A stretch of DNA of 64,000 nucleotides from Oculina patagonica (Eukaryota): the NCBI RefSeq assembly GCF_052425735.1, contig NC_135765.1, positions 19,902,001-19,966,000 of the forward strand, written 5' to 3'. The notes under the pieces are model-generated. The model worked only from the letters and a program-made list of their open reading frames with translations, ran no database searches and was not told the DNA's origin. Numbering within the stretch: the stretch's first letter is position 1; the number at the start of each line of letters is the position of its first letter. This document shows positions 1,548 through 44,900 of this stretch, piece by piece. Made by a program: the position numbers and the translations under genes.

Positions 1548-1700
1548 NNNNNNNNNNNNNNNNNNNNNNNNNNNNNNNNNNNNNNNNNNNNNNNNNNNNN
1601 NNNNNNNNNNNNNNNNNNNNNNNNNNNNNNNNNNNNNNNNNNNNNNNNNNNNNNNNNNNNNNNNNNNNNNNNNNNNNNNNNNNNNNNNNNNNNNNNNNNN
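1548..1700. other. Assembly gap (N run) preceded by low-quality homopolymer sequence
   Basis: Ns; homopolymer runs at 1445-1545. Confidence 0.99.
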
Positions 1701-4745: not shown

Positions 4746-5296
4746 ATGGACTCCCTCCACAGTCCAACAGATAGTCATTCTATTCATTCCTTACACGAGG
4801 GATTTGTGGAACTAGAGGAACTCGTCAGTTGTGATAACGAACTAGTTTGGAAAGAACGAGCGCGATGGATTAAACTTGAAGAAGATGTTGAAGAAAGCGC
4901 AGATCGATGGGGAAAACCACACATTCCTTGTCTGACATATCGAAGCCTAAGAGAAGTTGAAACAAATCTTCAAAATGGAGTATTCTTGTTGGATCTTCAG
5001 AGAGATAATTTGCCTTCCATTTGCGAGGCAATAATCGACGAAATCAAATTGCTGAAAAAGCTAGGAGACGAAGAATGCAATGCAGTTAAAACAGTTTTGT
5101 TAACAAGACATGAGCATCAACATCAAAATAAAGTTGGAAAGCATCGAGCAAAAAATATTGCCAGGCGTCTTTCAAGGATCATGCCTCAAGGTCAACGCCC
5201 CAGACAGCCGACAGCCACCCATGATGCTCTGTTACAAATTTTTTCTGAAGATGCACCCATCCCAAGAACCAAACACGAAGATGCAAGTGACCCCAT
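4746..5296 (+). CDS. SLC4: SLC4 exon 1 (N-terminal cytoplasmic domain)
   Basis: First in-frame ATG at 4746, with an in-frame TAA at 4722. Best donor is AT|gtatgt at 5297; the exact 3' boundary is uncertain because of the phase conflict. Confidence 0.85.
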
Positions 5297-8200
5297 GTAT
5301 GTGAAACTTAATTTTAGTCCCTTGGATGATTTCATATAGTTTTATTAAATTCCATCAATGTGCGTTTCTCGGGCAATTGCAATGCTTGTTATCACAGTGA
5401 AACTAACATTTTTTCGCGAATCATCGCTGATTTTTTTAATCAAAAAAAGTAATAATAATAATAATAAGAAGAATAAGAATGAGAATTATATTAGTTATCA
5501 ACTTTATTTATAGAGGGTGGTACGTGACAGTAAAATTGACTGAAAAACTAGTGGCCCTCGATGCAAAAATTACAATGATCAAAGTTAAAAATATCCTAAA
5601 ACTAGGAGTTGCTAATAGCAAGTAAAGTGCTGCGAAGTAAGTTATAAGAATAATAATTATTTAACAGTAGGAACGGAACGGAAGGTCATAGGAATGTTTT
5701 GGATTTTCACATCTTCAGATGTGAAAGATATGATTTTTCTCAGCAAGCGAAATACTGGTAATTAACTTTGTTTACTGATAGAACTAGTAATAACTGAATA
5801 TTTGGGGAGTGCGTTCGGCAGGGAGGGGTGATGAAGGAGGGTGGAGGGTAAGGGAGTGCAAGGAGTGGCAAGTACAATATTATGTTTTCAAATTCTCTTT
5901 ATATTTGAGGTCTGTTTGCGATGTGCAAACTAAAATCAAAAGTCCATGCAAAAAAAGTGAACAACATTGCTCCGTACTGTTGAAACCTTACAAAGGTTAC
6001 ACTCAATTATAATTATGAAATCGTTCGTTGTCCCATTTATACTTTCGGCGTTAATTACTTTTGATTACTGTATATGTTGTTATGACACCATTAATTGAAA
6101 TTGTTTACAGCCTAGCAGTATCGGTTTAATAGGCTTCTTTCGATATATTAAAATTCAGCATGGTAGCGAGGCCTAGACAAAAGAAATGAATAAACATGCT
6201 TGTAAAATTTCTTTTGTTTGTGTCCTTTAGGCCTCGCTACCAAGCTGAATTTAATATATCGAAAGAGGTCTATTAATTACTTTCTTAAATCTTTTCACGT
6301 GAGAACGAGGCCATCTGTGCCAAAATATCAGTGCTTTGAACTACAAAGTTCTCTCAAATGACTTTTTCAAAACACAACTTGAACAATACCAATGCTTCAA
6401 ACAACAAAGTTCTCTGAAATGAATTAAATTACGCTACAGTAACAAAGTCACGAGCGCGCGAACAAACACATTCGAACACGAACACGCACATTTAAACAAA
6501 GTATAAACGGAAAATCGGATTGCAAATTGAAAATTAAACGGTATGATTTAATGTACGCAACAGAAACGGGCGCGCACGCGCCGCTGAAATTTAAGTTATC
6601 AACTACCGCCGCTGATCACGCAACAGCGTGTTGTTAAAATCATCTCCAACGAAATAGTTGAATCGAGTGTGACTCGCATATAAAGCGCCCAGGCCCCACA
6701 CGGACAGTCATAAATAGTGTGCTGGCTACGCTAAGGCTTCGCAGCAATAACTGAATCAATTCTAGCGATGTTAGGTGGCTCTGAAACCGCTCCCGGGAAA
6801 TTAAGTGTTTAAAATTTTAATAAATACAGCTCATTTCGTTTTTAGAATTTAAGCTTGCCGCTTCGGAAAAATCAACGGTGACTAATAGAGACAATAGAGT
6901 GTTTATGTCTCGGACCTACAGATGTCCTTGGAAATTAAATGTTCTTAAAAGCTAGTCTCAATTTGTCTCATCAATTTGTCTCATCTTTGTCTCAATTTCA
7001 GGCCGCTGGTTAGTATCAAAGGCAAACCAGCATTGTTGCCACCTCTTGAAAGAGATGCTGACTCAAGTCAATCAGCAGCAGGATTTCAATGTGACTGTTA
7101 ACAACTATCATTCTGCAGACGACAACGTAGAACAATTAAAAGATCACAACGAGAGGTCTGATATACGAGGAAAAATTCCTGAAAATGCTCAAGCCACCAC
7201 TGTTTTAGTTGGAGCTCATAATGACTTGTCCTGTATAATCAGTGCATTTATAAGGCTTGCTAGTGGCTGTGATCTGGGTAACTTTGCTGAAGTGAGAATA
7301 CCAGTGCGATTCATGTTTGTACTGCTAGGGCCTGGAGATGACACAATGGACTATCACGAAGTTGGACGCTCAATTTCAACCTTGATGTCTGATAAAATTT
7401 TTCTGGAGTCTGCTTATCAAGCAAAGGTAAATGAACTGAAACATTCCGGTTTTTCATCTTGCCTATGCAATTCAAGGGCATAATTTCAGAAAGGTGGTGA
7501 AAGAAATGGCTACCTGATGGGGTGCTTGTCCAAATATATATATATATATTTTTTAAATATCTAATGGTATGGAAATCTGGAATCTTTTGGGGAAAATCTG
7601 GACTTAGGCGTCACACGATTTCATTTTTGTCATATGCATGTTGTCTTGATCTGATCTCTTTTGATCCTTTCACTGTTTAATGTTTTCACCCAACGGATAC
7701 CAACTCCAGTAGAACACATCGAACAATTACTATTTTCGGGGATTTTCAGGTTGCACATAACATGCTATCGAGTTTACATTAACTATCCGCACTACCCACT
7801 CCACCTTGGCAATAATTCTAATAACAGCGTGATCAGGTCTCACAGCTATTTCAAAATTTCAGTGTATTAGTTTTTAAACAAACAATTGTGTTGCAGCAAT
7901 CAAGACGTTATAACGCTGACGTTTTCAAATGTTGTGTAGATGTCCCAGTAACTGCCAAACGAAGAAAGTTAAAACGGCTAAGATCGACCAAACTGTATGA
8001 TAGTTCAATGTGTACCCAAAGAGAACACTGAACACTTATGAGCTCGATGAGGCGATAGTTTACCGACCTCTAGCCAGCGGACACTAATTTATTAATCTGC
8101 CCACGGAGAGAGCTCAATGAGTAAAATTGACGAAATCATAAGCAAAAACTTCAAAAAATAAACACTTTCACTGAATAAAAACACTATCAAATTACGGTAA

Positions 8201-11200
8201 AACAATTTAACGGCTCGCTCGCGGTTTCTATCAGCTTTTGATATTTGCTCTTCAACTATCAGCTGATAAAAACCTCAAGCTTGTCGTCTAATTGTTGATC
8301 AGACCACCACTGCTAGCCAATCAGATTGCCAGTTTATCTAATAGTGGTCACTGCAATACTTTAATTATGGGTTAGAGACTGTTGTGAGTGTTTTGTTGAT
8401 AAATACACGCACGCGCTGGCCGCACAATGAACGAGAAATTTTCAATACTGCACGAGGCGTAGCCGAGTGCAGTATTGAAAATTTTGAGTTCATTGTGAGG
8501 CCAGCAAGTGCGTGTATTTGTTAACAAAACACGAACGAACAGACTCTAACCCTTTTAATATACAATCTGAGTACACTGCATCGAACTGCAAGCGATCATC
8601 GACTTAACGAACTTCAAACAACAAACTTAATGTTTAAAAATAAGAAGTGTAGTAGTACATAATTACACGGGATTACATAAATAATATAAAAATCACAAAT
8701 TAGCCGTACAGAAATAAAACTTAAAATGGTTCATAAAATCGTTCATCAGCTGTGGTCGTTCATAAATACAGTCAGCGAGAAACTTGTTCAATGCAAGTCG
8801 ATGGCTTTCACAATCAAGCAACTACAAGCAAGTCAATCGCACACAAAAATGTATTTATTGAGCTGCAGTTTACCTTTGAACATGAAAGCGCTTCAAGTTG
8901 TTATCCTCTTCGATTTTGTTTGGTATTGGATCGTTGATAATTTGAGGAAAATACTTTTCTTCCACTTCTACAAGCTTTGAAGCTGAAGACACCTTCAATA
9001 ATGCACGATTTTCGTGCATTATTGTCAATACTGCACTGTCTGAGTTTGCTGACGACAGGTAAAGCAAAATCACGTGATCTATTTTAACCAATGGCGCGCG
9101 TGGATTTTGGACAGTGAACGAAGATTGTACATTATTATTCAACAAATGCGCGCGCTGCCCAAATATGGTCAAAATGTGATTGTTATCTGTCATCCGTACA
9201 TGACAGATATCCTGCGATATACGTAGGTTGTCAAGATTCGCCCGAAATCTTAGAAATGCTGCACAACCACAGTTTTTCCTAGCTACAAAATGTATTTTGT
9301 TGACAATTTGTTGAATAATAAAACAATTATCCTGCTCAATCTTGCGGAATATCGTCTGATTTTAGCCAACTCGGCCTACGGCCTCGTCGGCTAAGTATCA
9401 GGCGATATTCCGCGCGATTTCGCAGAATAATTGTTAATTAGAGTGTTCTGTCGAGGAACTATCGGCTAATTAATATACAATCTTCGTTCACTGTCCAAAA
9501 TCCACGCGCGCAATTGGTTAAAATAGATCACGTGATTTTGCTTTACCTGTCGTCAGCAAACTCAGACAGTGCAGTATTGACAATAATGCCGATATTTTCC
9601 GAGACAAAAACACTCTATCGTTTTTATTGTTCACCATTACGTTTTCTCCCGCGCGCCTATCCTATAAAGAGCATCTTAAATTATTTTTTTTTTCTTTTTA
9701 CTCTTTGAGGATAAAAGGCTTAATTCTGTTAACTGAAAGCCAAACTAATAGTCCAGTCATTTTACTAAAAATAATGGGTCAACCTGCAACTAATTGCAAC
9801 AGAAGAAATTCCAACGGTTTTTGACTGAGAAACTTATCGTTAATATCATATCAAAAGTCCCAGAAAATCCCGGCAGGGCAAGTCATTGAAAAATGGGTGT
9901 TTTTAGAAGCTCCGAGACACGCTTTTAGAGATGCACGGAAACGAGGCTGAATAAAGCTTTTCCAAAAAAAGCGCGTGTTTATATCTTAAAAGTCAAAAAT
10001 ACAACAAAATTTGAAATGATATCTCAATTGGAAGGTTTTCTTATTTTAGAAATCAAGTTAATTTGTGATATTTCATCAATACACAGCTTTAATTTTATGT
10101 CTATTTTAGTTGCTTGCCGCGTAAAAAAGTCGCAACCCTAGCCTGTGTATGGAACTGAATAACATTAAGTAAAGTTGGCTTTTTATCTGGAGCGATTTTT
10201 TATTTTTTTATTTTTTAATGAAACTAGTTGAAATGTTTAAACCTTTCTTCAAAAATAGTGATACAATTTAAGGAAGCTTAATTTTCGTGTAGAAAGAGAA
10301 ATAAAAGCGTGAGTTTTTAACTCGGAGGCGTGTATGAGACTCACACCCAAGGCGGGTGAGTTCGCAGGTATAGTGTGCTGTGTTTGACGCCTGCAGAAAT
10401 TTTAATCTCCATCGAACAAAATGGTTTAAGAACTTCAATGTTCTGTGCTCCGACCAGGTAAGTGTATTCTGAGTTCTCTTCAAGAGTAGTTTTTTCTTTC
10501 AAAATGGAGAAGTTTCCGTGTGACACTGAACCCTCGAGACAAGAGAGACTGTGCTAGACACATGTTCTGAAAGGGGGATTCTTGGGCTGAAGTGGAACAG
10601 GCGAGAATTTTAAATGTCTATGATTTGCCGGCCGCCGGTGCTGTTTACCATCAGCCATGCAGCGTCAACTTCTGGACCGAAAAACAAATGCCAAAAGTAT
10701 TCAGTGCGTCAGATCAGCTGGATAGTAAGAAAAGAAAAAAAGGAAGCTTTTATCAACGTGGCGAACTTTCATAATTACTGTCATGGATCTAATGGAGGAA
10801 TTTCTTGGTGACTCAGCTACTGCCGCATATAGCCACACCCATATGAAGGCAAGACTTCAGGAACACTTTGGCGATCAGATTATTATAACCGAGATCAACG
10901 AAAGCCAAATGTTGTAACATTTAGAAGTACTGCATCAGCTATTCTGCACGAATTTCACTCACAGCAAAACGAAGTTGATTTGGTTTCGGAAAAATAAAGT
11001 ATTATCAGAACTCGGCTGCCTCAAGGTTGATTAAGAATGAGATCAAACTGCTTAAAACATCTAACGAAGTCTTCCTTTCGATCGAAACAGAAGCTGAGGA
11101 AAACGTTGACTTCCTTCCAGCCACGTTAAAGACGTTTTTGGAGGGTATTCTGGTTGGTAAAGATAACGTGAAGTTAGCATCAATTGGACAGGCTATTGTT

Positions 11201-14200
11201 CAGATGGCGCGACCTAGAGTGATTCTTGCGCCTTTACAAGTTGGTTTAGCAGTGCAGCTTCATCACAACTTCGCATCGAGATTTCTAATAGACACCCTTC
11301 ATCGCCATGGCTTCTTTTCTTCGTACCAAGAGGTACAGCTGTTTAATAAAAATGCTGCATTGAACCAGGGAACTGATATGCCAGATTATGACGGAGAGTT
11401 TGCTCAGTACATAGCTGACAATGTGGACCATAATCTACGTATCCTTGACGGTAACGACACCTTTCATGGCATGGGCATGATTTGTATCATCACTCCTGGC
11501 ACTAACCGAAAAAGAAGCGTCCCGAGACGAAAGTTAAGTCCTCAAGACATCTCAGCAGCTGGAAACGTTGGCCTACGCCCGCCATCTGAGCCAAGGCAAT
11601 CACAAGTGGAAATAAAGTACAATGACGTAGTTGTTGCAAGAGAAGTAGATCCACAGCGAATTTGGACATACTTTGGAAGACGTTTCTGCTGTTTAGCACC
11701 ACACGCCCAGCATGGGCTGGAATGATGCAAGCTGTCCATCGGGGTAACCATCAGGGGAAGTCATCAATAACACTTCTATCGATGATCGACCTGAACCCAA
11801 GTGAAGTCACATGTATTTCCTCCACTCTGAAAACATTCGCGGCGCCACAACATCGCTAACCCCATTAAGATTTCGATGATAGCGACGATGACGGTGATTG
11901 ACACAAGAGCTGGAAGAAACTGTGAAATTCATTTTCATTTAACAAACGATGTTCTTTTAGAATATTTCACCATTGTGAAAGATATATTTATTTGTTGGCT
12001 CGCTTGCAAATTTTTGTGCGATCCATAAAAGGATAATAAACTATCGCAACTACCATTTTTGGTGTAGACCGATTCGCTCCACGATTGAAAATTTAAATAT
12101 TATGAGATTTATTTTGCTTATTGAATACTTTTTGATTAATTTTTCCTCCGGATAAAAGTTTTCAAGCATATTTAAAGTATATTTCATGGTTTTTGGATAA
12201 AATAAATGAAATTCTGGCCATAAACAAGCATAATAACAGAACTTCTGTTTTTGAGCCTCGTTTTCATGTTACGCAAAAGCACGACTTAGAATCCGTTAAA
12301 TTTTCGAGATGTTCCCATGCATAGATCCTTTGGGACTTTTAGTATGTTGATCTTGAGACTAATTCGAAATGATTTGCGGTTGTTGCAATTAGTTGCAGGT
12401 CCAACCACAAAATGATTGGACTATAACAAACGAAACAAAACCAGACAAGAAACTCACTAAATGCAGTGAATTTAGTGGAGTTTCTCTGTCTGTAGGCCCG
12501 CTTCTTCATCGGGCGGGCCGGCACTTGGCTGATAATGACTCTCCGCGGACAAACACTATCGCACCACGTGGTCAATTTGAACCAATAAGAATCGCAGATA
12601 ATTTAGTGGTGAACTACAATTGCTGATAGTGTACGCTAGCTCAGCCAATCAGTGTGTATTTGCATTAGTATACTAGTAGAAATCTAATTAACACAAGCTC
12701 AAATACCCCTAAGACAGCTTGCTTGAATGTTACATGTAATAGCATTCATGTGTGTCGACCTTCCGGAACTCGACCAATGAATACATCGAGGATATTACAC
12801 GTTGGCTCGAAGATATGAATTTTATGTTCTCGTGGCAAAAACGATATCTCACGAGGGAGCGTAGAGACATCGCTTTTGCCACGAGAACATTAAATTCATA
12901 TCTTCGAGCCAACGTGTAATGTTCTTTTTATTATATGGAGACCAGATGAAGTTGATGTTGCCGAATTTATTTCATTGTTTTCGAATGATCGAGCCAGTTT
13001 TACAAATCAGCGTTCGTCTTCATAGAAAATACAAAGCACCCGTGCCCGGGATATAGAAACACTAACTGAATTCCAATCGATCAAACAAAATACTTGTCAA
13101 CTAAATTACACATAAGAACTGAAAACATCACTGATTTTGACTTGAATGCGGCAAAGTGTTGACGGCCGATAGTTATCAACCGCTTTTGTTTTCTTCTTTA
13201 CAACATCTTCACTTGTGAAATTCCTTGCGAAGAATTCCCTCTAAAAGCCTTGAAATCGTCAAGGTTCCCATTATGGTGTTCTCGTTCTTAACTTTTTTGG
13301 AAAACTTATTCTTTTTCATTACTTAGTAAAACAAATTAAACCTTGTGTCGGTGCTTGCTAACAACAAACGACACGAGAATCGTGGCGTCAATGAGTTAAG
13401 CCCAGGCCAAACGAGGATGTTGATGAGGGTTCAAACTTTCACCCGTGGCATGAAACTCTCATCGACTTTGAACGTGCTCAAATTTTTCATGAGAGTCGAT
13501 GAGAGTTTGACAGACTCTCGTTCTCGTTTGGCCCGAGTTGGTGATAGTAGATGAGACTTGACGTTAACTCTCATGAGAGTTGATTCTCATCAACTCTCAT
13601 CCTCGTTTGGCCCGGGCTTTAGGCAATGAGCGATATGCCACTCGCAAGAGTGTCCTTCGTACGGAACATACACCACTCGGGTCCCGGGTGGAGTGGCGTA
13701 TGGAATCTACGAGTGGTTTAGTTCCCAGTAAGACATTCTCCTCCATATAATAATGAGAGTTTTGTTCATGTTCGTTTCAGAGTCGACAGGATTTATTGGA
13801 ATCCCTTGCCAGCTTTATGGGTGACAGTCTTATTATCCCTCCAGGAGAATGGGACCGAAATCTGCTCAATCAAACAGTGCCAATCTTAGCCAATCAGGCC
13901 AAAGAGCTAGCTTTTAGGAGACGACGAGGTGGAATTAGAAGTAAAGATGTAGAAAAAGAAACATTCCGTGAGGCGATTCAAGAAAACGATATGTTTGATG
14001 ATCCCCTTTCAAGGACGGGCAAGTTTTGCGGTGGGCTTGTACGTGATGTCAGGAGGCGGTTCCCCTTCTACCTCAGCGATTTTAAAGATGCCTTAGATGT
14101 TCATTGTTTGCCAACAATAATCTTTGTGTACTTTGCTTGCCTTGCTCCAGCCATCACTTTCGGAGGTTTGCTGAGTGAAAAAACCAACGCCTGGATGGGA

Positions 14201-15646
14201 GTTTCAGAAATGATATTGGCAACAGCATTATCTGGAGTTCTGTTTTCGCTGTTTGCAGGGCAGCCACTCATCATAATTGGGGCTACGGGTCCACTTCTTG
14301 TGTTTGAAAAGAGTACATTTCAACTAAGCGAGAGTTTTGAAATTGAGTTCCTTCCTTGGCGAGCGTGGGTCGGAATATGGGTGATGGTTATATGCTTTAT
14401 TATTGTTGCACTTGAGGGATGCTTTCTGATCAATTACTTTACACGTTTTACAGAAGAAATATTTGCCTTAATGATATCCATTATTTTTCTATACGACGCG
14501 TTTTACTACGTGGGACACGTTTTTCAAGCGTACCCCTTAAACGCCGGTGTCACAACTAGTTTGTTGGTTCCTTCGAACTCGACTGATAACGAGGCGGTAA
14601 ATTACATCAAAAATCACACAACAGCTAACACAGCCCTGTTTTCCACAGTCTTGATGCTAGGAACGTTTTCTGTTGCCTATTTTTTGAGAAAGTTGCGTCA
14701 CAGTCATTTTTTTGGGCCGAGGACTCGACGTACTGTCAGTGATTTTGGAGTTTTTATTGCCATTGTTGCTATGGTGACGGTTGATTGGCTGACAGCGGGT
14801 GTGTACACGCAGAAGTTGTCGGTTCCTGATGGGCTTTCCGTTACTTCACCCAACAGACACAGCTGGCTTATTAACCCAATGGGAGTTGCACAAACCATGT
14901 CTGCCGGTGCTATCTTTGCAGCTCTTGTTCCAGCAATTCTTGTAAGCATCTTGATCTTCATGGAGATCGAGTTTACTGGCATTATTCTGGACAAAAAAGA
15001 CCATAAATTGAAGAAAGGCATGGGCTACAACTTGGATCTCTTTGTTCTAGGACTGTTGGTTGGACTGTGCTCTATTCTGGGTCTGCCCTGGATGTGCGCC
15101 ACTCCTGTTCACACGCTGTCTCATTTCCACGCCTTAACAGTGATTAGTACAAACCACGCTCCCGGGGATCATCCTCATCTGATAGAAGTAAAAGAACAAC
15201 GTCTCACAAACATTGTGATCCACCTTCTGATTGGCTTCACGGTTCTTCTTTCACCAGTAATGCGTCTTATACCCATCGCGGTTCTCTTTGGAGTATTTAT
15301 CTTCCTTGGAGTGTCCTCTTTATCACATATTCAGCTGGTTGAACGAGTAAAGCTTCTTTTCATTCCATCTGCTCACCATCCAGATGAAAAATTTGTCACG
15401 AACGTTAAAACGAGCAAGATGCACATGTTTACTATTGTTCAAGTGTGTTGTGTATGTGCGCTGGTTGCCATGAAGCTCACTGCTGTCGCACCAGCTTTCC
15501 CATTCTTTATAATCTGCATGATTCCACTTCGAAAGCTTTTAGAGCGGTTTTTCTCAACCGAAGAACTGGAGGCCTTAGACACTGAAGTAGAAGATGTATA
15601 TGACAGTGATCTGGATGAATATGATTCAATTCATATCCCTATCTAA
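4746..15646 (+). CDS. SLC4: SLC4 (Band 3/anion exchanger family) bicarbonate transporter, 3 exons: 4746-~5296, 7002-7426, 13781-15646; probable scleractinian SLC4-gamma type
   Basis: Cytoplasmic-domain motifs FVELEEL, WKERARWIKLEEDVEE..RWGKPH (exon 1) and GKIP..A.ATTVLVG, PVRFMFVLLGP, YHEVGRSISTLMSD (exon 2). Membrane-domain motifs FACLAPAITFGGLL, GQPLIIIGATGP, RFTEEIF, EQRLT, VLFGVFIFLG (exon 3). The exon2/3 junction AAG|gtaaat...tttcag|AGT is in frame (AYQAK|SRQDLL). The gamma assignment is inference. Confidence 0.93.
6126..6276. mobile_element. Palindromic MITE in SLC4 intron 1
   Basis: ~50-bp arms (TTAATAGG..TCTTTCGATATATTAAA..TCAGC..GGTAGCGAGGCCTA) in inverted orientation. Confidence 0.75.
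7002..7426 (+). CDS. SLC4: SLC4 exon 2 (cytoplasmic domain, second half)
   Basis: Acceptor tttcag at 7000-7001 and donor AAG|gtaaat at 7427. ORF 7046-7483 carries Band-3 motifs. Confidence 0.85.
8369..8552. repeat. Long imperfect palindrome centred on CGAGGCGTAGCCGAG (Crypton-like element end)
   Basis: ~85-bp arms read directly. Related palindromes at 9322-9435, 12794-12920, 26019-26165, 27421-27517, 47569-47698 and 60592-60697. Confidence 0.75.
9016..9589. repeat. ~115-bp near-identical inverted repeat pair (9016-9130 / 9476-9589)
   Basis: The opposite-strand ORFs 8870-9193 and 9514-9708 share VKIDHVILLYLSSANSDSAVLTIM. Confidence 0.85.
10560..11850 (+). mobile_element. Decayed large DNA-transposon ORF (Academ-like transposase relic) in SLC4 intron 2
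   Basis: Frameshifted fragments DLPAAGAVYHQPC, PLQVGLAVQLHH.FASRFLIDTLH..GF.SSY.EV, ADNVDHN.RILDG.DTFHGMGMI, PAWAGMMQ, MIDLNPS. Superfamily assigned from motif recall. Confidence 0.65.
13399..13618. mobile_element. PIF/Harbinger-type MITE
   Basis: TIR AGCCC(A/G)GGCCAAACGAGGATG; TTA TSD at 13396-98 and 13619-21. Confidence 0.8.
13781..15646 (+). CDS. SLC4: SLC4 exon 3 (entire transmembrane HCO3- cotransporter domain and C-tail)
   Basis: Acceptor ttcgtttcag at 13780, then an uninterrupted 621-codon frame with many hydrophobic segments, ending DEYDSIHIPI*. Confidence 0.95.
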   Translation, partial: SRQDLLESLASFMGDSLIIPPGEWDRNLLNQTVPILANQAKELAFRRRRGGIRSKDVEKETFREAIQENDMFDDPLSRTGKFCGGLVRDVRRRFPFYLSDFKDALDVHCLPTIIFVYFACLAPAITFGGLLSEKTNAWMGVSEMILATALSGVLFSLFAGQPLIIIGATGPLLVFEKSTFQLSESFEIEFLPWRAWVGIWVMVICFIIVALEGCFLINYFTRFTEEIFALMISIIFLYDAFYYVGHVFQAYPLNAGVTTSLLVPSNSTDNEAVNYIKNHTTANTALFSTVLMLGTFSVAYFLRKLRHSHFFGPRTRRTVSDFGVFIAIVAMVTVDWLTAGVYTQKLSVPDGLSVTSPNRHSWLINPMGVAQTMSAGAIFAALVPAILVSILIFMEIEFTGIILDKKDHKLKKGMGYNLDLFVLGLLVGLCSILGLPWMCATPVHTLSHFHALTVISTNHAPGDHPHLIEVKEQRLTNIVIHLLIGFTVLLSPVMRLIPIAVLFGVFIFLGVSSLSHIQLVERVKLLFIPSAHHPDEKFVTNVKTSKMHMFTIVQVCCVCALVAMKLTAVAPAFPFFIICMIPLRKLLERFFSTEELEALDTEVEDVYDSDLDEYDSIHIPI

Positions 15647-19546: not shown

Positions 19547-22500
19547 TCAAAAGAGTCGACTTGTGGACTCCGGTTTGCCATGCCTTCGGACCATCCTGGA
19601 AAATGCGTTCAGGAAACTTGCTGTATCCAACGAAAAGACTACCTCCAAATGAACTGCTCTTGAACTCGCACAAGTAAAGAGACACAAATAACGCTTCGCA
19701 GACACTTTTCTTGTCAGCTTGACAACGAATGGACCAGCAAAATCGACTCCGCAATGGGCGAAACATCGCACTGATGTTCCCAGCCTGACATCTGGTAGGA
19801 GTGCCATGATTTGTTCACCTCTGCGTTTTCTTTGAAGCTTACAGAAGTTGCACTCTCGTTCCCATCGCTTGATTTCTTCTCTGCCATTGACAATGCAGAA
19901 TTTTTGTCGTAGCTCAGCAAGAGTATATGTGCAACGACGAACTTCGAAATGTTATGTTTCTTCGGTAATATAACCGGGTGCTTAGCATCATAAGGTAAAC
20001 TGGACAACTCTAGTCTACCACCCACACGCAAGATTCCATCACTGTCCAAAAACGGTGACAATCTCCAAAGTTGGCTACTTTTAGAGACAGTTCCTCCTCC
20101 TTTCAAATCATCAGCTCTTCCGAAAAGTTCCTATTTGAGCTTTGCGAACCCAGTACTTCTCTGCATTCTCGATTTCCTCTGGTTCTAGGGTTTCTTTCAG
20201 GTAAGCGTTTGGCCCGATATTTTTCACCTGGTTATCACTTGACATATTTCTCTGCTCTTTCTGTAGTCCTGCTGTCTTACACTTGGATATAAATCGCAGG
20301 ACATACGCGGTGATTCTTAATTATCTGAGCCAGGACAAAAACCTCTCGGCATCAAGCAATGGAAGCGATTTCTTGCTTTAAAACGTGAGATTGATTTTCA
20401 ACAATTCTTGTTTGCCTTCTTTAGTGCAATCAGTCTGACCAGGTCGGCTTTCCGAGGGCCAGGATTCCTCCCCCTCGTGTAAGAAGGCAGGTCCCTGAAA
20501 CCAGCGGCTCTCAGCTGACAAATCTGTAAGGTCAAGACCCCTCGTTGTGTCATCAGCAGGGTTTTCTTCACTTGGCACGTGCCGCCATTGTGTTGGGCGT
20601 GATTTTCGCTGAATTTCTGCTACTCGATTAGCAACAAACGATTTCAGTCGTCTTGAATGACCTCTGATCCAGTAGATCACATCCATGCTGTCAGTCCACA
20701 TGGTGTGTTCACTTAGCGGTATTTCTAGTTTCTCAGAGACCGTTTGAGCTAGTCGCACTCCAAGCACCGCCGCCATTAATTTAAGGCGCGGGACGCTCAC
20801 AGCTTTGATCGGTGCTACTCTTGCTTTGGCTGTTACTAGGGCGGCGGAAATGTGACCACTCACAAGTGTGTATCTGGCGTAGCTGACTGCAGCATAAGAT
20901 AGTCTGGAAGCGTCGACGAACGTATGAAGCGATACTCATTCTACTTCCTCGTCGTGTCGAAAGCAACGTAGTATTTTCACCTTTGGAGCTTCGGGTAGAG
21001 TGGACTGCTGAGTGGACGCTTTCAAGTCGTCAGGAAACTCTTCATCCCAGTCAAGGCCTCCTAACCAAGATTCTTGCAGTGCCATCTTCGCTCTGATAGT
21101 GTATGGGGCTAGGAACTGGAGCGGATCAAACAGTGTGGCAATACGACTCAACAGTCCTCGTTTCATTCCATTTAACGCCTAATGTTTTGACACTCGGCAG
21201 CTCTGATTCGTCGAACTTCACCCCAGTTGCTCGATCGTTCTCTGGAATCCCTTCTAGCACTTTCATTCGATTACTACACCACTTTTGTGCATGGAAACTG
21301 GCGTCACTCAGGAGTTTAGTTAAGTCCTCACGCACGAGAATAGCATCTGTTTCTGAATCCATAATGTCATCCATGTACATATCTTGAATCATAACCTGAG
21401 CTGCTGTTGGGTACTTGTCTACAAAGTCTTGGGCGTGACTGCGAACTACGAACTGAGCAAGGTAAGGGGATGCTCTGTCTTCAAACACTAGGCGAACTGC
21501 TTCATAAACATCAACAGGCTTTGACACATCCAGGTACCTCCATAACAGTCTGTGATATCTGCGGTCTTTTTCAGCGAGTTTTTTTTTCAGCAACAGGTTT
21601 CTGTCGAAAACAAAGTAGAATCTCCAGAACATCTCTCTGAAGCTTTGGTCCCGTAAGCATCGCGTCATTCAACGACGCTCCTTTGCATTTCGCAGCCGAG
21701 TCAAATACACCCTGCGAGCAGATCCCCTTCTTTTTCCACTGATATATGAGAAGAAGGGGCTCTGAAGTTGTGTATTTTTTTTTTGGGGGGGTTTTTTTTC
21801 GGGGGGGCTTTTCCCCCCGGGGGCTTTTTTTTTTTTTCTACCGTTTTTTTAAAAAAAACACCCCACAAAAAGAAGCCAACCCCCAACCCCCCCGGAAACT
21901 TTCTACTTTCCAAATCTCAACCGTAGGGAAGTTAAAAGAGGCTCTGCTCGCAGGGTGAGTCAAATACTATGCGTACTTTTGTGGTCTCTCTATACTCTCG
22001 GATGACTGGGAAGTGAGGAAGATACCAGCTTGGACCGTCATTCACAACTTCAGTCTCTACCTTTCGGATATAGTCCTTGTCAATGTTCGCGTTCATTGCT
22101 TCCTTGTAACGTTGTGCAAACTCCGGCTTTTTGAGTAGGCTCTTTTCAAGCGAGTACAGACGTTTTTCTGCCTCTTCTCTGTTATCAGGTACAGAGGGTA
22201 ATTCTTCCTTCCACGGAATTGCGACCTTTCGTCTTGACTTAATTGGTTAACATCTAAATTTCGAACTCCGAGAGAGTCAATCTCCCACATTTCTCGCAAT
22301 TGTTCATCAAGGCGTGTCTCACTTAAGGTCTGCGTTCGGAAGGTTCTGGCAAAAGTATTTCTCTTAGCTGAAGGCAGGGCGGGAAAACGTCCAAACACGA
22401 GTCCACCCCGAGGGCGTTTTCCTTGCCACCGGTGCTCCAATTGGCCCATAGCACTCTGACAAGGCTAAGGACAATTCGGGATGGTCTGACCCAATAAGAA

Positions 22501-41900: not shown

Positions 41901-44900
41901 ATTCTTATTAAAACTTATTTATTTCTTGCCTTTTTCGTGAGTTTTAACCAAGTCTTCAAGTTGCTTGAGCCTGGCCTTATCAGGAGTACTCTCCTTGACT
42001 TGTTTTTCTAAATGCACTACTTGCTGCTTTAATGTCTCCTCTTGTTCATCCAGAGCCTAACAGCAAAAAGATTATAAGTACTTACAACACAGTCATACAT
42101 GTTGCATTCATTATATTCATCTGAATAAAGGTAAAATTATCTCTCTCATGAAATAAAAATATTAAAATGCTTCAGGGCTTTAAACAATGGCCGAAATTAT
42201 AATAGAGGCAAGATTGCCCATCTAGATGTAGGGGTGTAACCATACATCAAACTATCGATGTATCGCGATTGGGAGTGCTCCGATAGTGATGCATCAATGG
42301 CAAATTCAACTATCGATAACAATCGCGATAGTTTCAGGCCAAACAGTCCAGTACTGTAATCATTTCCACTTCTTTCTTGTGATTGCTTTGGAAAAAAACA
42401 GTTGCTTTGTACCGGATGCCATTTTGAAACAGGCATCCCAGGAAACCTTGCGAAAATATAAAAACCAGTTCCTCTCATGTGGAAACTTTGTCAAACATAG
42501 GCACGCTAAGCGTGCAGGAGTTATTTTTTCAATTTATGGGGTGGCTTGGGGTGAAACTGGGTGATTGTCCTGTTGGGATGGTTTATGTCATGGGTTGAGC
42601 TACCGTAGTTATTCGGTTATAAGGCGCACTCGGTTATAAGACGCACCCCAAACTTGGCAACATTGTTATGCCAAGTTTACAAACTGAAAATTCTCCAAAC
42701 ACACTCGGTTATAAGACGCACCATGAGTTGGAGAGTTAAACAGATGTAGTGATCAATCTAAGGACAGTTTTTTCTTACAAAATTTGAATGTTTGAATGTT
42801 GTTCATACTCCTTGGCACAATCTTCGAGTAAAGAGGTAACATTTCCTGCTAAAAAAGACGTAAATCCACTTGAGCAAAACATCTTTCCTTCGTTCATGCT
42901 TTGAACTTAGCTGCTTAGCAACCTGGCAGATGTGTTGTTACCAGTGACCACTGAGTTTGTAGCTTTGTTACCAAGTTATCAAGCATGCTTCGTATCGCTA
43001 CGAACTTTGTTTATCGAGTGTTTTTCAAAGATTCTCAAGCTTTTTTGGTGTTTTCCTTGTCTTCTAAAGTCATTTTCCACTTTCCACGCTTAGAAAGGTT
43101 TGTTTCAAATGAGTATGCTTGATTTTCTTTGTCTAATTTCAACAAAATGCTGGCATATACAGGTGTTACTAAAACTCGTTTTATATACGCGATAATAAAC
43201 TTTGCGTTTAAACTTAATGTTTCTTATATCTTTAATACTGTAAAAGTCAATAACCAACATTTAGTGTTTTCATTTCTCTTGTTTTAACTGTAAGTTCCAG
43301 TAAAATGGCGGTCATAAGATTTTGTTGGGCGAAAATACTCGGCTATAAGACGCACCCCAATTATGGCATGAACTTCCCACAGAAAAACAGATTTTTCTCG
43401 AAAAAACCGTGCGCCTTATAACCGAATAACTACGAGTATTTGTGAATGGCGGCCCACAGAGTCACTTTTTTGCACAAAATTTGCTTGCAAACAAAATAAT
43501 TTTTACGTGCATTTTGATACATCAGTCAGAACTGTTTTATTCAATACGTAAATTTCATCATTTAAGTGAAAAACAAGAACTAATTTAATTATCAAAACGG
43601 CACGAAATGGCACGTTCTTATTCTGTTTAAAGCGGTTATTTTGTTGCTAGCTTTGTAGCAACCATAACATGAAACTTTTTTTTTTTTTTTTTTTTTTTTT
43701 AATAGTTTATTGCAAACAAAAAAAGAAAAAAAAAAAAAAAACAGCTACATACATGTACAATGTGTCTGAGCTTTAAAAACAATACGGTACTTATTTACAG
43801 TGCTTGCTTATGTTAATTCTTTATCAGCTAAAATTCCTGTCCTTTCAAACATTACATTATTTACAGATGCAAAAGCTATACATTTAAGGAGAATAAGTAG
43901 ACAAAACAGAAAAAGCGAGGTAAACAAAAAAACTTCGTGACGAGTACAAAGACTAATTACGGACAAAAGGAAGCAGAAAGATAATAATAAAATAAAATAA
44001 ATAGATAAAATAAAGTGCCTTACAAAATTTCACCTAAAAAAAAGCCTTAGAGTTGAATTTGAGACTTTGAGCTGCTTTTTTCGATAGATATTTTATCTTT
44101 TAGAAGGGCTAGAAAGGTTTTGAAGTGGTAGTGTTGTTCATCTCTCGAGGCAGTGTAGATATAATATTTAGCAATGAGTACACAGAGGTTTAAGCCAAGT
44201 CGTAAAGGAAAGTTAGTTGTAAAACCATAGATAATGTTTTTCTCGTGTAGCTCAATGGAATCGTCATTTTTGACGTTCCACCACGTAGCAAACGTATTCC
44301 AGAAAGTCTGTACATTCGGACAAGATACAAAAAGATGTCTCAGGGTTTGCGTTTGCGTGCATAGGTGGCATTTATCATGGTCCTTGATTTTATCTCTGTA
44401 AAGGGTTGAATTGGTTGGTAAAATATGGTGAATAATTTTGAATTGGAAGATAGCAAGTCGAGTGTCTTTTGTTACTTTAAAAGGAATATCGTAGATAGCG
44501 CGTATTGTGCTATCGTCCAGACTCAATTGCCTCAATCTTCTTTCTGCGGTCGGGGTTTCAAACTTTTTGTTTATGAGAATTTTGGTAGCCACTTTGCATG
44601 ACAATTTACCGATATCTATTTTCTGGTTATGATCTGATTTGCGCTGCGCTTCGTCAGCAGAGCTTTTAAGTGAACGGATCCAGCTAGCGGGTATGGCATT
44701 ACATAAGCCACAGTACTTGAGAAATGTTGTTTTGATTTGGAATTTAGTGTAAAAATCATTAAATGTTAAGAAGTTGTTTCCACAGAAAATATCTTTGATT
44801 CGGACGACCCCCGATTTGTGCCATTTTCTATAATACACGGAGAAGCCTTCAATTTTGATAAAAGAGTTGTTCCATATGATTTCATTAAGTATTTGTTCTT

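What the first reader, a model, noticed from the sequence alone, without database searches (positions are those of the whole stretch)
14480..15130. Chimeric substrate pocket: AE-type TM8 glutamate but histidine in place of the anion-binding arginine
Seen: TM10 reads PWMCATPVHT, with His at 15110-15112. Human AE1 has PWLSATTVR730S, NBCe1-type transporters have a hydrophobic residue there, and the H+/OH- conducting SLC4A11 has His (PWIHAAYPHS). TM8 ILIFMEIEFT keeps the AE1 E681 equivalent (14963) and adds a second Glu two residues later. TM5 IFLYDAFYYVGH has the NBC-like Asp but lacks the KxxK DIDS-reactive lysines. The TM5-6 loop is short, has two N-glycosylation sequons (NST, NHT) and lacks the NBC cysteine cluster. 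Inference: the transport mode may be neither classical Cl-/HCO3- exchange nor Na+/HCO3- cotransport; it could be pH-gated or proton-linked, which would matter at a calcifying front.
Basis: partly seen in the sequence, partly recalled or inferred. Interest (0 to 1): 0.72.

Follow-up and report, generated by a model that had tools for sequence, protein, structure and literature searches.

The report
Cnidarian SLC4-alpha: His replaces anion-binding Arg
This is the coral's SLC4-alpha bicarbonate-transporter gene, not the calcification paralogue: a transcribed, strongly conserved anion-exchanger-like gene in which the arginine that holds the anion in human AE1-3 is a histidine in almost all cnidarian members sampled, suggesting an untested pH-dependent transport mode.

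Summary
ORF 13796-15646 (+) encodes a whole SLC4 membrane domain. Gapless alignments put His439 (15110-15112) on AE1 R730 and Glu390 (14963) on AE1 E681.

The calcification context does not hold. The gene is the orthologue of Stylophora SLC4-alpha, not SLC4-gamma. The beta/gamma tandem pair lies on another contig, and both keep Arg.

The His sits in a well-supported clade (UFBoot 99) of hexacorals (including Nematostella), octocorals and hydrozoans. That clade is sister to coral beta/gamma inside the AE clade. Exceptions are a scyphozoan with Asn and one unnamed sequence with Leu.

The gene is functional. dN/dS is 0.076, and a spliced mRNA contig confirms the exon-3 acceptor.

Only two pocket residues separate alpha from every Arg-type relative: R730 to His and T728 to Pro. 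The second TM8 Glu, the TM3 Thr and the missing DIDS lysines are shared with coral beta/gamma. The TM5 Asp occurs only in anthozoans.

The Glu/His central pair matches human BTR1/SLC4A11 by convergence. My best reading is a Na+-independent anion transporter with a titratable site, pH-gated or H+-coupled. This is inferred, not shown. I found no paper that notes the substitution.

The parts
4746..5286 (+). Coding exon 1 of SLC4-alpha (start ATG at 4746), first half of the Band 3 cytoplasmic domain. The 3' end is a best guess.
   Evidence: Pfam PF07565 E 2.6e-37 on ORF 4746-5336. tblastn of Stylophora, Montipora and Nematostella alpha proteins. The phase-1 donor at 5287 pairs with the acceptor before 7002, but this junction is not confirmed by reads.
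7002..7426 (+). Coding exon 2, second half of the Band 3 cytoplasmic domain. The 5' end is a best guess. The donor is AAG|GTAAAT after 7426.
   Evidence: Pfam PF07565 E 1.9e-33. Orthologue HSPs end at 7426. Splice-site inspection.
13781..15646 (+). Coding exon 3: linker plus the entire 14-helix SLC4 membrane domain and C-terminus in one exon. Stop codon at 15644-15646.
   Evidence: Pfam PF00955 E 3.5e-197. PDB hits AE3 592 bits, AE2 577, AE1 525, NBCn1 460, BTR1 219. Acceptor TTTCAG ends at 13780. An mRNA contig in run X1 starts its match at 13779 with 1044 nt lying elsewhere.
15110..15112 (+). His439 (CAC), at the position of AE1 R730 / AE2 R1060 / AE3 R1052 / BTR1 H724, in the first turn of half-helix TM10.
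   Evidence: Gapless phmmer coordinates. The AF2 model helix starts at Pro437. Invariant in 49 alpha sequences.
15104..15106 (+). Pro437, at the position of AE1 T728. The second alpha-specific pocket change.
   Evidence: Pro in all alpha-clade sequences; Thr in coral beta/gamma, mollusc and vertebrate AEs and in Na-coupled SLC4s.
14963..14971 (+). TM8 Glu390-Ile-Glu392. Glu390 is the AE1 E681 equivalent. Glu392 replaces the vertebrate Gln683.
   Evidence: The second Glu is shared with coral beta/gamma and Trichoplax.
14495..14497 (+). TM5 Asp234 (AE1 E535 position). The K539 and K542 equivalents are Tyr238 and His241.
   Evidence: Asp in hexacoral and octocoral alpha (Tyr in Stylophora); Glu in hydrozoan alpha.
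14576..14620 (+). Two N-glycosylation sequons (NST at 14576-14584, NHT at 14612-14620) in the short TM5-6 extracellular loop.
   Evidence: Sequence. The loop has pLDDT below 50 in the model. Zoccola et al. predicted one glycosylated Asn in this loop of SpiSLC4-alpha.
15473..15475 (+). Lys560, equivalent of AE1 K851 (TM13). It is the only one of AE1's four cavity-lining positive residues (K539, K542, R730, K851) that is kept.
   Evidence: The four AE1 residues are named in PMC8191340.
14699..14701 (+). His302, an alpha-clade-specific invariant His (Asn or Thr in Arg-type relatives), in the cytoplasmic stretch after TM6.
15326..15328 (+). His511, an alpha-clade-specific invariant His (Gly in Arg-type relatives), in the SLSxIQL loop.

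Best explanation
The finding lies in exon 3 of the SLC4-alpha gene of a stony coral.

Shown:
- The gene has three coding exons. Two encode the Band 3 cytoplasmic domain and one encodes the whole membrane domain.
- It is transcribed and spliced, and it evolves under strong purifying selection.
- It belongs to a cnidarian-wide sister lineage of coral SLC4-beta/gamma inside the AE (TM8-Glu) clade.
- At the base of that lineage the central site changed at two residues. The anion-anchoring Arg (AE1 R730) became His, and the residue two before it (AE1 T728) became Pro.
- The rest of site S1 stayed AE-like: Glu390, Thr394, Ile227, Phe231, the TM3 and TM10 half-helix ends and Lys560.

Inferred:
- The protein is still a Na+-independent elevator-type anion (HCO3-/Cl-) transporter.
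- Its only positive side chain at the central site is now titratable near physiological pH and sits next to Glu390.
- Anion binding, and therefore turnover, should depend on protonation of His439. This gives either acid-activated, alkali-silenced anion exchange, or co-transport of H+ with the anion.
- Its role is general cnidarian acid-base physiology, possibly restricted to a life stage or cell type. It is not skeleton formation.
For: Identity
- Best named hit is S. pistillata A0A0G2SJ98, 84% identical over the membrane domain.
- Its Asn569 and Lys868 match the paper's SpiSLC4-alpha Asn577 and Lys876 with a constant offset of 8.
- This genome has five SLC4 loci. The tandem pair on C11 (beta/gamma) keeps TVRS. 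C12 has FMDQQ and TVLS (delta). C14 has ALPHS (epsilon).

Phylogeny
- IQ-TREE gives the alpha clade UFBoot 99, alpha plus beta/gamma 100, and places them inside the AE clade at 98.
- Alpha-clade members are named Nematostella, Montipora, Stylophora, Paramuricea (octocoral), Clytia (hydrozoan) and Rhopilema (scyphozoan).

Functionality
- dN/dS is 0.076 at dS 0.87. Synonymous sites are saturated against more distant orthologues while dN stays at 0.11-0.37.
- The same three-part gene architecture is found in four other genomes.
- A 2530-nt contig at depth 50 in run X1 matches from the predicted acceptor onward, with its first 1044 nt lying elsewhere.

Pocket
- Alpha-specific invariant residues are L177, H302, P437, H439 and H511.
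- The AF2 model (pLDDT 80.7) matches inward-facing AE2 at TM 0.87-0.96, and TM10 starts at Pro437.

Literature
- The Arg/Glu versus hydrophobic/Asp dichotomy is in PMC13263692. So is BTR1's central His as a candidate H+ site that could bind anions when protonated.
- R730C abolishes or strongly reduces AE1 anion exchange.
Against: - No transport measurement exists for any SLC4-alpha.
- The pKa of His439 was not computed, because the tools give no model coordinates.
- A His paired with Glu390 could stay protonated over the whole physiological range. The protein would then behave as an ordinary exchanger.
- Rhopilema (Asn) and one unnamed relative (Leu) have lost even the His. A positive or titratable side chain is therefore not indispensable in this lineage.
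- Expression was seen in one study's runs only. Two poly-A runs of a sister species gave no reads on exon 3. Adult Stylophora shows none.
Confidence: 0.45

Rival explanations
1. It is an ordinary electroneutral Cl-/HCO3- exchanger. His439, held protonated by the neighbouring Glu390 and the helix dipoles, simply substitutes for Arg, and the transport mode is unchanged.
For: Site S1 is otherwise AE-like. The protein sits in the AE clade. The model superposes on AE2. The review notes that a protonated central His could bind anions as the Arg does.
Against: The Arg is invariant in 141 sampled Glu/Arg-type sequences, including coral beta/gamma. R730C cripples AE1. The change is fixed together with T728 to Pro and kept across most cnidarian classes, which suggests a selected functional shift rather than a neutral swap.
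Confidence: 0.2
2. It is a BTR1/SLC4A11-like electrogenic H+ (OH-) pathway, possibly stimulated by NH3. It would have arisen by convergence inside the AE clade and would no longer carry bicarbonate.
For: It has the same central Glu/His pair as BTR1 (E675/H724), where E675Q abolishes and H724A lowers the H+ current. Three of AE1's four cavity-lining positive residues are lost.
Against: It lacks BTR1's other signature residues: H719 is Cys here, P723 is Val, TM3 LTTAP is GATGP, and BTR1 has no TM8 Thr whereas alpha keeps Thr394. It scores only 219 bits against BTR1 versus 592 against AE3. The genome already has a BTR1-type gene on C14.
Confidence: 0.12
3. It is a cation-coupled anion transporter. 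With the Arg gone, a Na+ or K+ ion anchors the anion at Glu390, as Na+ does at the TM8 Asp of NBCe1, NDCBE and AE4.
For: Loss of the TM10 Arg is the main difference between Na-independent and Na-dependent SLC4s. The TM8-TM10 segment scores as high against NBCn1/NDCBE (98 bits) as against AE3 (97). Anthozoan alpha has the NBCe1-type TM5 Asp.
Against: All cation-dependent members have Asp, not Glu, on TM8, and Asp to Glu severely impairs NBCe1. Alpha has FMEIE, not FMDQQ. His is not the hydrophobic Leu or Ile of Na-coupled members.
Confidence: 0.1
4. It is the calcification-specific transporter at the calcifying front (SLC4-gamma or a functional equivalent), as the first-stage notes assumed.
For: The organism is a stony coral, and SLC4 transporters are required for skeleton formation.
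Against: Orthology is to SLC4-alpha. Gamma is elsewhere in this genome and has Arg. Alpha with His occurs in anemones, octocorals and hydrozoans. Alpha was not detected in adult Stylophora tissue, whereas gamma marks calicoblasts.
Confidence: 0.03
5. It is a non-transporting relic or pseudogene, or a retrogene, whose pocket has decayed.
For: The membrane domain has no introns, and alpha was undetected in adult Stylophora.
Against: dN/dS is 0.076. ORFs are intact in more than 45 orthologue clusters. The three-exon architecture with introns is conserved in five genomes. A spliced transcript exists. Site S1 is otherwise intact.
Confidence: 0.03

Closest known systems
Stylophora pistillata SLC4-alpha (UniProt A0A0G2SJ98; Zoccola et al. 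2015, PMC4650655)
   Same: It is the orthologue. The membrane domain is 84% identical, with the same TPVH motif and FMEIEF TM8. It has a glycosylation sequon in the same loop and the K851-equivalent Lys. It shows the same two-domain organisation (Band_3_cyto plus HCO3_cotransp), and the window's three exons cover its whole length by tblastn.
   Different: Stylophora has Tyr at the TM5 Asp position. The paper describes alpha only as an AE-like paralogue that is not expressed in adults. I found no mention of 'arginine', 'histidine', 'R730' or 'E681' in its text.
Vertebrate anion exchangers AE1-3 (SLC4A1-3); structures 4YZF, 8GV9, 8Y85
   Same: They are the closest solved relatives (592-525 bits) with the same fold (TM-score up to 0.96). 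They share the TM8 Glu, Thr685, the Ile528/Phe532 plug, Lys851 and His734. Alpha falls in the same clade in the tree.
   Different: The central Arg is His and T728 is Pro. K539 and K542 are absent. TM3 has ATGP instead of FSGP, and Q683 is Glu. The last three differences are general to cnidarian AE-like proteins. The TM5-6 loop is shorter.
Human BTR1 / SLC4A11 (structures 7X1G, 7X1I; Lu et al. 2023, PMC10547724)
   Same: It has the same central pair, a TM8 Glu (E675) plus a central His (H724) at the Arg position, with a Pro close to the His.
   Different: It is only a distant relative (219 bits, 28-29% identity). Alpha lacks H719, has the Pro at -2 rather than -1, has GATGP rather than LTTAP on TM3, and keeps the TM8 Thr. 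The resemblance is convergent. This genome has its own BTR1-type gene (ALPHS) on contig C14.
Coral SLC4-beta and SLC4-gamma (Tinoco et al. 2023, PMC10268325)
   Same: They form the sister lineage (UFBoot 100). They share TM3 GATGP, the TM8 E-x-E motif and the lack of the K539 lysine.
   Different: Beta and gamma keep Thr-Val-Arg on TM10 and Glu on TM5. Their membrane domains are split into many exons, and they lie in tandem on another contig. Gamma is restricted to stony corals and is needed for skeleton formation, whereas alpha is found across Cnidaria.

Membership tests
SLC4 bicarbonate-transporter family | HCO3_cotransp membrane domain (PF00955) preceded by the Band 3 cytoplasmic domain (PF07565) | tested here: met
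   PF00955 E 3.5e-197. PF07565 E 2.6e-37 and 1.9e-33 on exons 1 and 2. The 7+7 fold matches AE2 at TM 0.87-0.96.
Cnidarian SLC4-alpha subfamily | Orthology to SpiSLC4-alpha, with monophyly apart from beta/gamma, delta and epsilon | tested here: met
   The best named hit is the Stylophora protein, whose Asn and Lys positions match the published alpha numbering with an offset of 8. Clade UFBoot is 99-100. It is the only SLC4 gene on its contig.
Na+-independent anion exchangers (AE1-3 type) | Central Glu on TM8 (AE1 E681) | tested here: met
   Glu390 aligns to E681/E1011/E1003.
Na+-independent anion exchangers (AE1-3 type) | Central Arg on TM10 (AE1 R730) that binds the anion | tested here: not met
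   His439 is at that position. Arg is invariant in 141 Glu/Arg-type sequences sampled.
Na+-independent anion exchangers (AE1-3 type) | Electroneutral, DIDS-sensitive Cl-/HCO3- exchange | not testable with these tools
   This needs flux or pH assays. The covalent DIDS lysine K539 is absent (Tyr238), while the K851 equivalent is present.
Na+-coupled SLC4 (NBCe, NBCn, NDCBE, AE4) | Central Asp on TM8 (FMDQQ) and a hydrophobic residue at the R730 position | tested here: not met
   Alpha has FMEIE and His. This genome's delta gene (C12) shows the FMDQQ and TVLS signature.
BTR1 / SLC4A11 | TM8 Glu plus central His | tested here: met
   Glu390 and His439. phmmer coordinates 658-756 are consistent with E675/H724. 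The literature equates H724 with the AE Arg.
BTR1 / SLC4A11 | Other BTR1-only signature residues (H719, P723, TM3 LTTAP) and overall sequence relatedness | tested here: not met
   Cys434 is at the H719 position and Val438 at P723, and TM3 is GATGP. The score is 219 bits against BTR1 versus 592 against AE3.
Coral SLC4-gamma (calcification paralogue) | Tandem or near-tandem with SLC4-beta, restricted to stony corals, nearest relative beta | tested here: not met
   The window holds a single SLC4 gene. The beta/gamma pair is on C11, about 28 kb apart. The alpha clade includes anemone, octocoral and hydrozoan members.

The most novel reading that the evidence does not exclude
SLC4-alpha is an ancient class of SLC4 transporter, older than the split of Anthozoa and Medusozoa. 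In it an AE-type protein convergently acquired the Glu/His core of BTR1. It would work as a proton-titrated or proton-coupled anion transporter: acid-gated Cl-/HCO3- exchange, or H+-anion co-transport. That mode is not represented among the characterised AE1-3, Na-coupled or BTR1 types. It would also be a natural R730H experiment on the SLC4 mechanism.
Probability: 0.35. Interest if true: 0.65.

Novelty: new variant of a known kind. Interest (0 to 1): 0.5.

Why it matters
Current SLC4 reviews sort the mammalian family by two central residues:
- Arg plus Glu gives Na-independent exchange.
- A hydrophobic residue plus Asp gives Na-coupled transport.
- His plus Glu is seen only in the odd H+/OH- transporter BTR1.

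Here an AE-clade lineage carries His plus Glu and has been kept under strong constraint across most cnidarian classes. It therefore offers a natural test of what the central Arg does, and of whether a titratable residue there makes an SLC4 pH-gated or proton-coupled.

For coral biology the result is a correction. This locus is not the calcification transporter. Coral acid-base models should treat SLC4-alpha as an uncharacterised transporter that is probably not a classical one.

Arg was also lost independently in nematode and other invertebrate AE-like lineages. The mammal-based classification is therefore incomplete.

Tried and rejected
- Retrogene or pseudogene reading. Rejected: the gene has three coding exons with canonical splice sites, five genomes share the architecture, a spliced transcript exists, and dN/dS is 0.076.
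Rejected on paralogue mapping in the window's own genome and on the tree.
- 'Chimeric' NBC-like features. TM3 Thr and the second TM8 Glu turned out to be shared with coral beta/gamma (the Thr also with mollusc AEs, the Glu also with Trichoplax). The TM5 Asp is limited to anthozoans.
- The protein-atlas search on an octocoral and a hydrozoan member gave only generic SLC4 clusters and no useful taxonomy. Names came from the listing of cluster members instead.
- A full MAFFT alignment of all 376 proteins timed out. It was replaced by hmmalign to a query-numbered profile.
- Literature searches for functional or expression data on SLC4-alpha found only its naming and presence or absence.
- The exon 1/exon 2 junction could not be fixed. 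Read laying is limited to 6 kb and one call, so only the exon-3 acceptor was tested.
- The life stage or tissue of the expressing runs is unknown, because run and organism names are coded.
- No side-chain geometry or pKa could be obtained, because the structure tools return no coordinates.
Full report
**What is in the sequence**

Window 13796-15646 (+) is one 616-codon open frame. It matches the SLC4 membrane-domain profile PF00955 at E 3.5e-197. Against solved structures it scores best on human AE3 (592 bits), AE2 (577) and AE1 (525). NBCn1 (460) and NBCe1 (453) follow, and BTR1/SLC4A11 is far behind (219).

- TM10 is PWMCATPVHT, with CAC at 15110-15112 (residue 439).
- TM8 is FMEIEF, with Glu390 at 14963 and Glu392 at 14969.
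- TM5 is LYDAFYYVGH, with Asp234 at 14495.
- The sequons NST (14576) and NHT (14612) lie in a short, Cys-free loop.

**Does the His align to R730?**

Yes. phmmer of residues 370-470 gives gapless matches to AE1 664-761, AE2 995-1091, AE3 987-1083 and NBCe1 738-834.

By arithmetic, Glu390 falls on E681/E1011/E1003/D754 and His439 falls on R730/R1060/R1052. These are the residues that the 2026 JBC review (PMC13263692) tabulates as site S1. The match to BTR1 (658-756) is consistent with E675 and H724. [quoted passage not shown]

An AlphaFold2 model of the membrane domain has mean pLDDT 80.7 and pTM 0.83. It starts half-helix TM10 at Pro437, so His439 is in its first turn, as R730 is in AE1. The model superposes on inward-facing AE2 (8GV9, 8JNI) at TM-scores of 0.87-0.96.

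**Which gene is it?**

The gene has three coding exons.
- Exon 1 starts at ATG 4746. Together with exon 2, which ends at 7426 before GTAAAT, it encodes the Band 3 cytoplasmic domain (PF07565, E 2.6e-37 and 1.9e-33).
- Exon 3 starts at 13781, after TTTCAG. It carries the linker, all membrane helices and the C-terminus.
- The exon 1/2 junction is unresolved. My best guess is 5286|7002, phase 1.

A Pfam search of the window's own genome finds five SLC4 loci:
- This one on C8, plus a 99.8% identical haplotype contig, C1290.
- A tandem pair on C11 about 28 kb apart. One copy has ETELTG and AATVRS, the other ETEMTG and ADTVRS.
- One on C12 with FMDQQ and TVLS.
- One on C14 with ALPHS.

These correspond to alpha, beta/gamma, delta (Na-coupled type) and epsilon (BTR1 type) of Zoccola et al. 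2015.

The best named relative is S. pistillata A0A0G2SJ98 (84% identity). Its sequon Asn569 and its Lys868 equal the paper's SpiSLC4-alpha Asn577 and Lys876 minus 8. The window gene is therefore SLC4-alpha. It is not SLC4-gamma, as the scan's other note on this locus (s1-274318) supposed, and it is not a retrogene.

**How old and how conserved is the His?**

TPVH, or a close variant, is present in three groups:
- All 29 hexacoral clusters retrieved, including Montipora and Nematostella.
- Eight clusters of about 54% identity, with SPIHS.
- Eleven clusters of about 46% identity, with CPVHS.

Cluster membership names the second group as octocoral (Paramuricea clavata) and the third as hydrozoan (Clytia hemisphaerica XP_066933245.1). 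A scyphozoan relative (Rhopilema esculentum) has Asn, and one unnamed sequence has Leu.

An LG+G4 IQ-TREE of 91 membrane domains was rooted on Na-coupled SLC4s. It gives:
- the alpha clade UFBoot 99;
- alpha plus coral beta/gamma UFBoot 100;
- the enclosing TM8-Glu (AE) clade UFBoot 98.

The sister lineage and all other nearby outgroups carry Arg. Arg to His is therefore one event at the base of a pan-cnidarian lineage that predates the Anthozoa-Medusozoa split.

**Is the gene functional?**

Orthologous loci from four other assemblies keep the same layout of two Band_3_cyto ORFs followed by a one-exon membrane domain.

Nei-Gojobori dN/dS between the window and the closest of these is 0.076 at dS 0.87. 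Against the others, synonymous sites are saturated while dN is 0.11-0.37. The His codon is CAC or CAT.

In run X1 a 2530-nt contig of word depth about 50 matches 13779-15264 with its last 1486 nt. Its first 1044 nt lie elsewhere, which is roughly the length of exons 1 and 2 plus a short leader. There is no comparable coverage of the adjoining intron apart from repeats. That is a spliced mRNA using the predicted acceptor.

Expression is not universal:
- A second species' run shows depth of about 4.
- Two poly-A raw-read runs show no reads on the exon.
- Zoccola et al. did not detect alpha in adult Stylophora or its ESTs.

**What exactly differs in the pocket?**

I compared 49 alpha sequences with coral beta/gamma, mollusc and vertebrate AEs and Na-coupled members, column by column.

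Five positions are invariant in alpha and different in all Arg-type relatives: Leu177, His302, Pro437, His439 and His511. Two of them are in site S1: R730 to His and T728 to Pro.

The remaining S1 and cavity residues are unchanged: Ile227 (I528), Phe231 (F532), Glu390, Thr394, Val438, His443 (H734) and Lys560 (K851).

- The TM3 Thr (GATGP) is the invertebrate norm. Only vertebrate AEs have FSGP.
- The second TM8 Glu is shared with coral beta/gamma and Trichoplax.
- The K539 lysine is also missing from beta and gamma, as Zoccola et al. noted.
- The TM5 Asp, which matches NBCe1 D555, is anthozoan-only. It is Tyr in Stylophora and Glu in hydrozoans.

**Mechanistic reading**

The literature supplies three anchors.
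- In AE1-3 the Arg head group and the TM10 backbone bind the anion. R730C abolishes or strongly lowers exchange.
- In Na-coupled members a Na+ ion bound to the TM8 Asp replaces the Arg. Asp to Glu is poorly tolerated.
- In BTR1 the Glu/His pair serves H+/OH- transport. E675Q abolishes and H724A lowers the current. The review notes that a protonated central His could bind anions in the AE manner.

Alpha combines an AE scaffold and AE-type Glu with the BTR1-type His. The most economical inference is a Na+-independent anion transporter whose central positive charge titrates near physiological pH. It would be pH-gated or H+-coupled. I put this at about 0.45.

The rivals are:
- an ordinary exchanger with a permanently protonated His (0.2);
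- a BTR1-like H+ pathway (0.12);
- cation coupling (0.1);
- a calcification-specific role (0.03);
- a dead gene (0.03).

None of these can be decided without transport assays or pKa calculations.

**Comparison and novelty**

SLC4-alpha is a named but uncharacterised cnidarian paralogue. It is mentioned in PMC4650655 and PMC5604590. Term searches of PMC4650655 and of the SLC4-gamma paper PMC10268325 found no mention of its central residues.

Lu et al. 2023 describe H719, P723 and H724 as conserved only among BTR1 orthologues, in a comparison with human family members. The present data show an independent AE-clade lineage with the same central His. This is a new variant of a known kind.

It is of moderate interest for SLC4 mechanism and for cnidarian acid-base physiology. 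It lacks the calcification relevance that motivated the original score.

Noticed in passing
Proteins P0215, P0275, P0307, P0319, P0336, P0373 (nematode clade, e.g. Bursaphelenchus); P0256, P0258, P0267, P0287, P0289; P0294: The central Arg has been lost independently in other AE-clade (TM8-Glu) lineages. It is Gln in a nematode clade (UFBoot 100), Pro or Thr in an unnamed clade, and Gln in P0294. The mammal-based Arg/Glu rule for AE-type proteins is therefore not general.
   Followed up: partly
P0241 (Rhopilema esculentum XP_065056470.1) and P0073: Inside the alpha clade the His is replaced by Asn in a scyphozoan and by Leu in an unnamed sequence that groups with the hydrozoan sequences. Pro437 is kept in both.
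   Followed up: partly
window 14699-14701 and 15326-15328: Two further His residues (His302 after TM6, His511 in the SLSxIQL loop) are invariant in hexacoral, octocoral and hydrozoan alpha. They are Asn/Thr and Gly in all Arg-type relatives. They might contribute to pH sensing outside the pocket.
   Followed up: no
window 7427-13780 (intron 2): This intron is 6.3 kb here, but the corresponding gap between ORFs is only about 0.2-0.7 kb in the orthologous loci L023, L026, L027 and L028. It holds a 232-codon ORF (11027-11725) with no Pfam hit. It also holds short elements at about 12400-12800 and 13400-13700 that reach word depths of several hundred in the two contig-based runs laid (X1, X5), so they are probably transposable elements.
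   Followed up: partly
G000:C1290 (12,265 bp contig): This is a second copy of the alpha membrane-domain exon. It is 99.8% identical at the protein level (one Met/Ile difference) and is most simply an unmerged haplotype contig. The His is present.
   Followed up: partly
window 19714-21668 (-) and 44047-45756 (-): Retroelement remnants: a Pao/BEL retrotransposon peptidase domain (PF05380, E 7e-14) at 20378-20863, and a 569-codon ORF with a zf-RVT domain (PF13966) at 44047-45756.
   Followed up: no
window 1548-1700: An assembly gap or masked run of 153 N, flanked by poly-A/T and low-GC sequence.
   Followed up: no
L026:13473-13649: About 1.6 kb downstream of the alpha gene in another coral assembly, a 58-codon ORF has a weak PF00955 hit. 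It may be a fragmentary SLC4 duplicate.
   Followed up: no
P0218-P0231 (e.g. Polystyrenella longa, Planctomycetota): Bacterial proteins of about 680 aa combine Band_3_cyto, a PTS EIIA-2 domain and the SLC4 membrane domain. Most have TM8 Asp with the TM10 Arg (TVRS).
   Followed up: no
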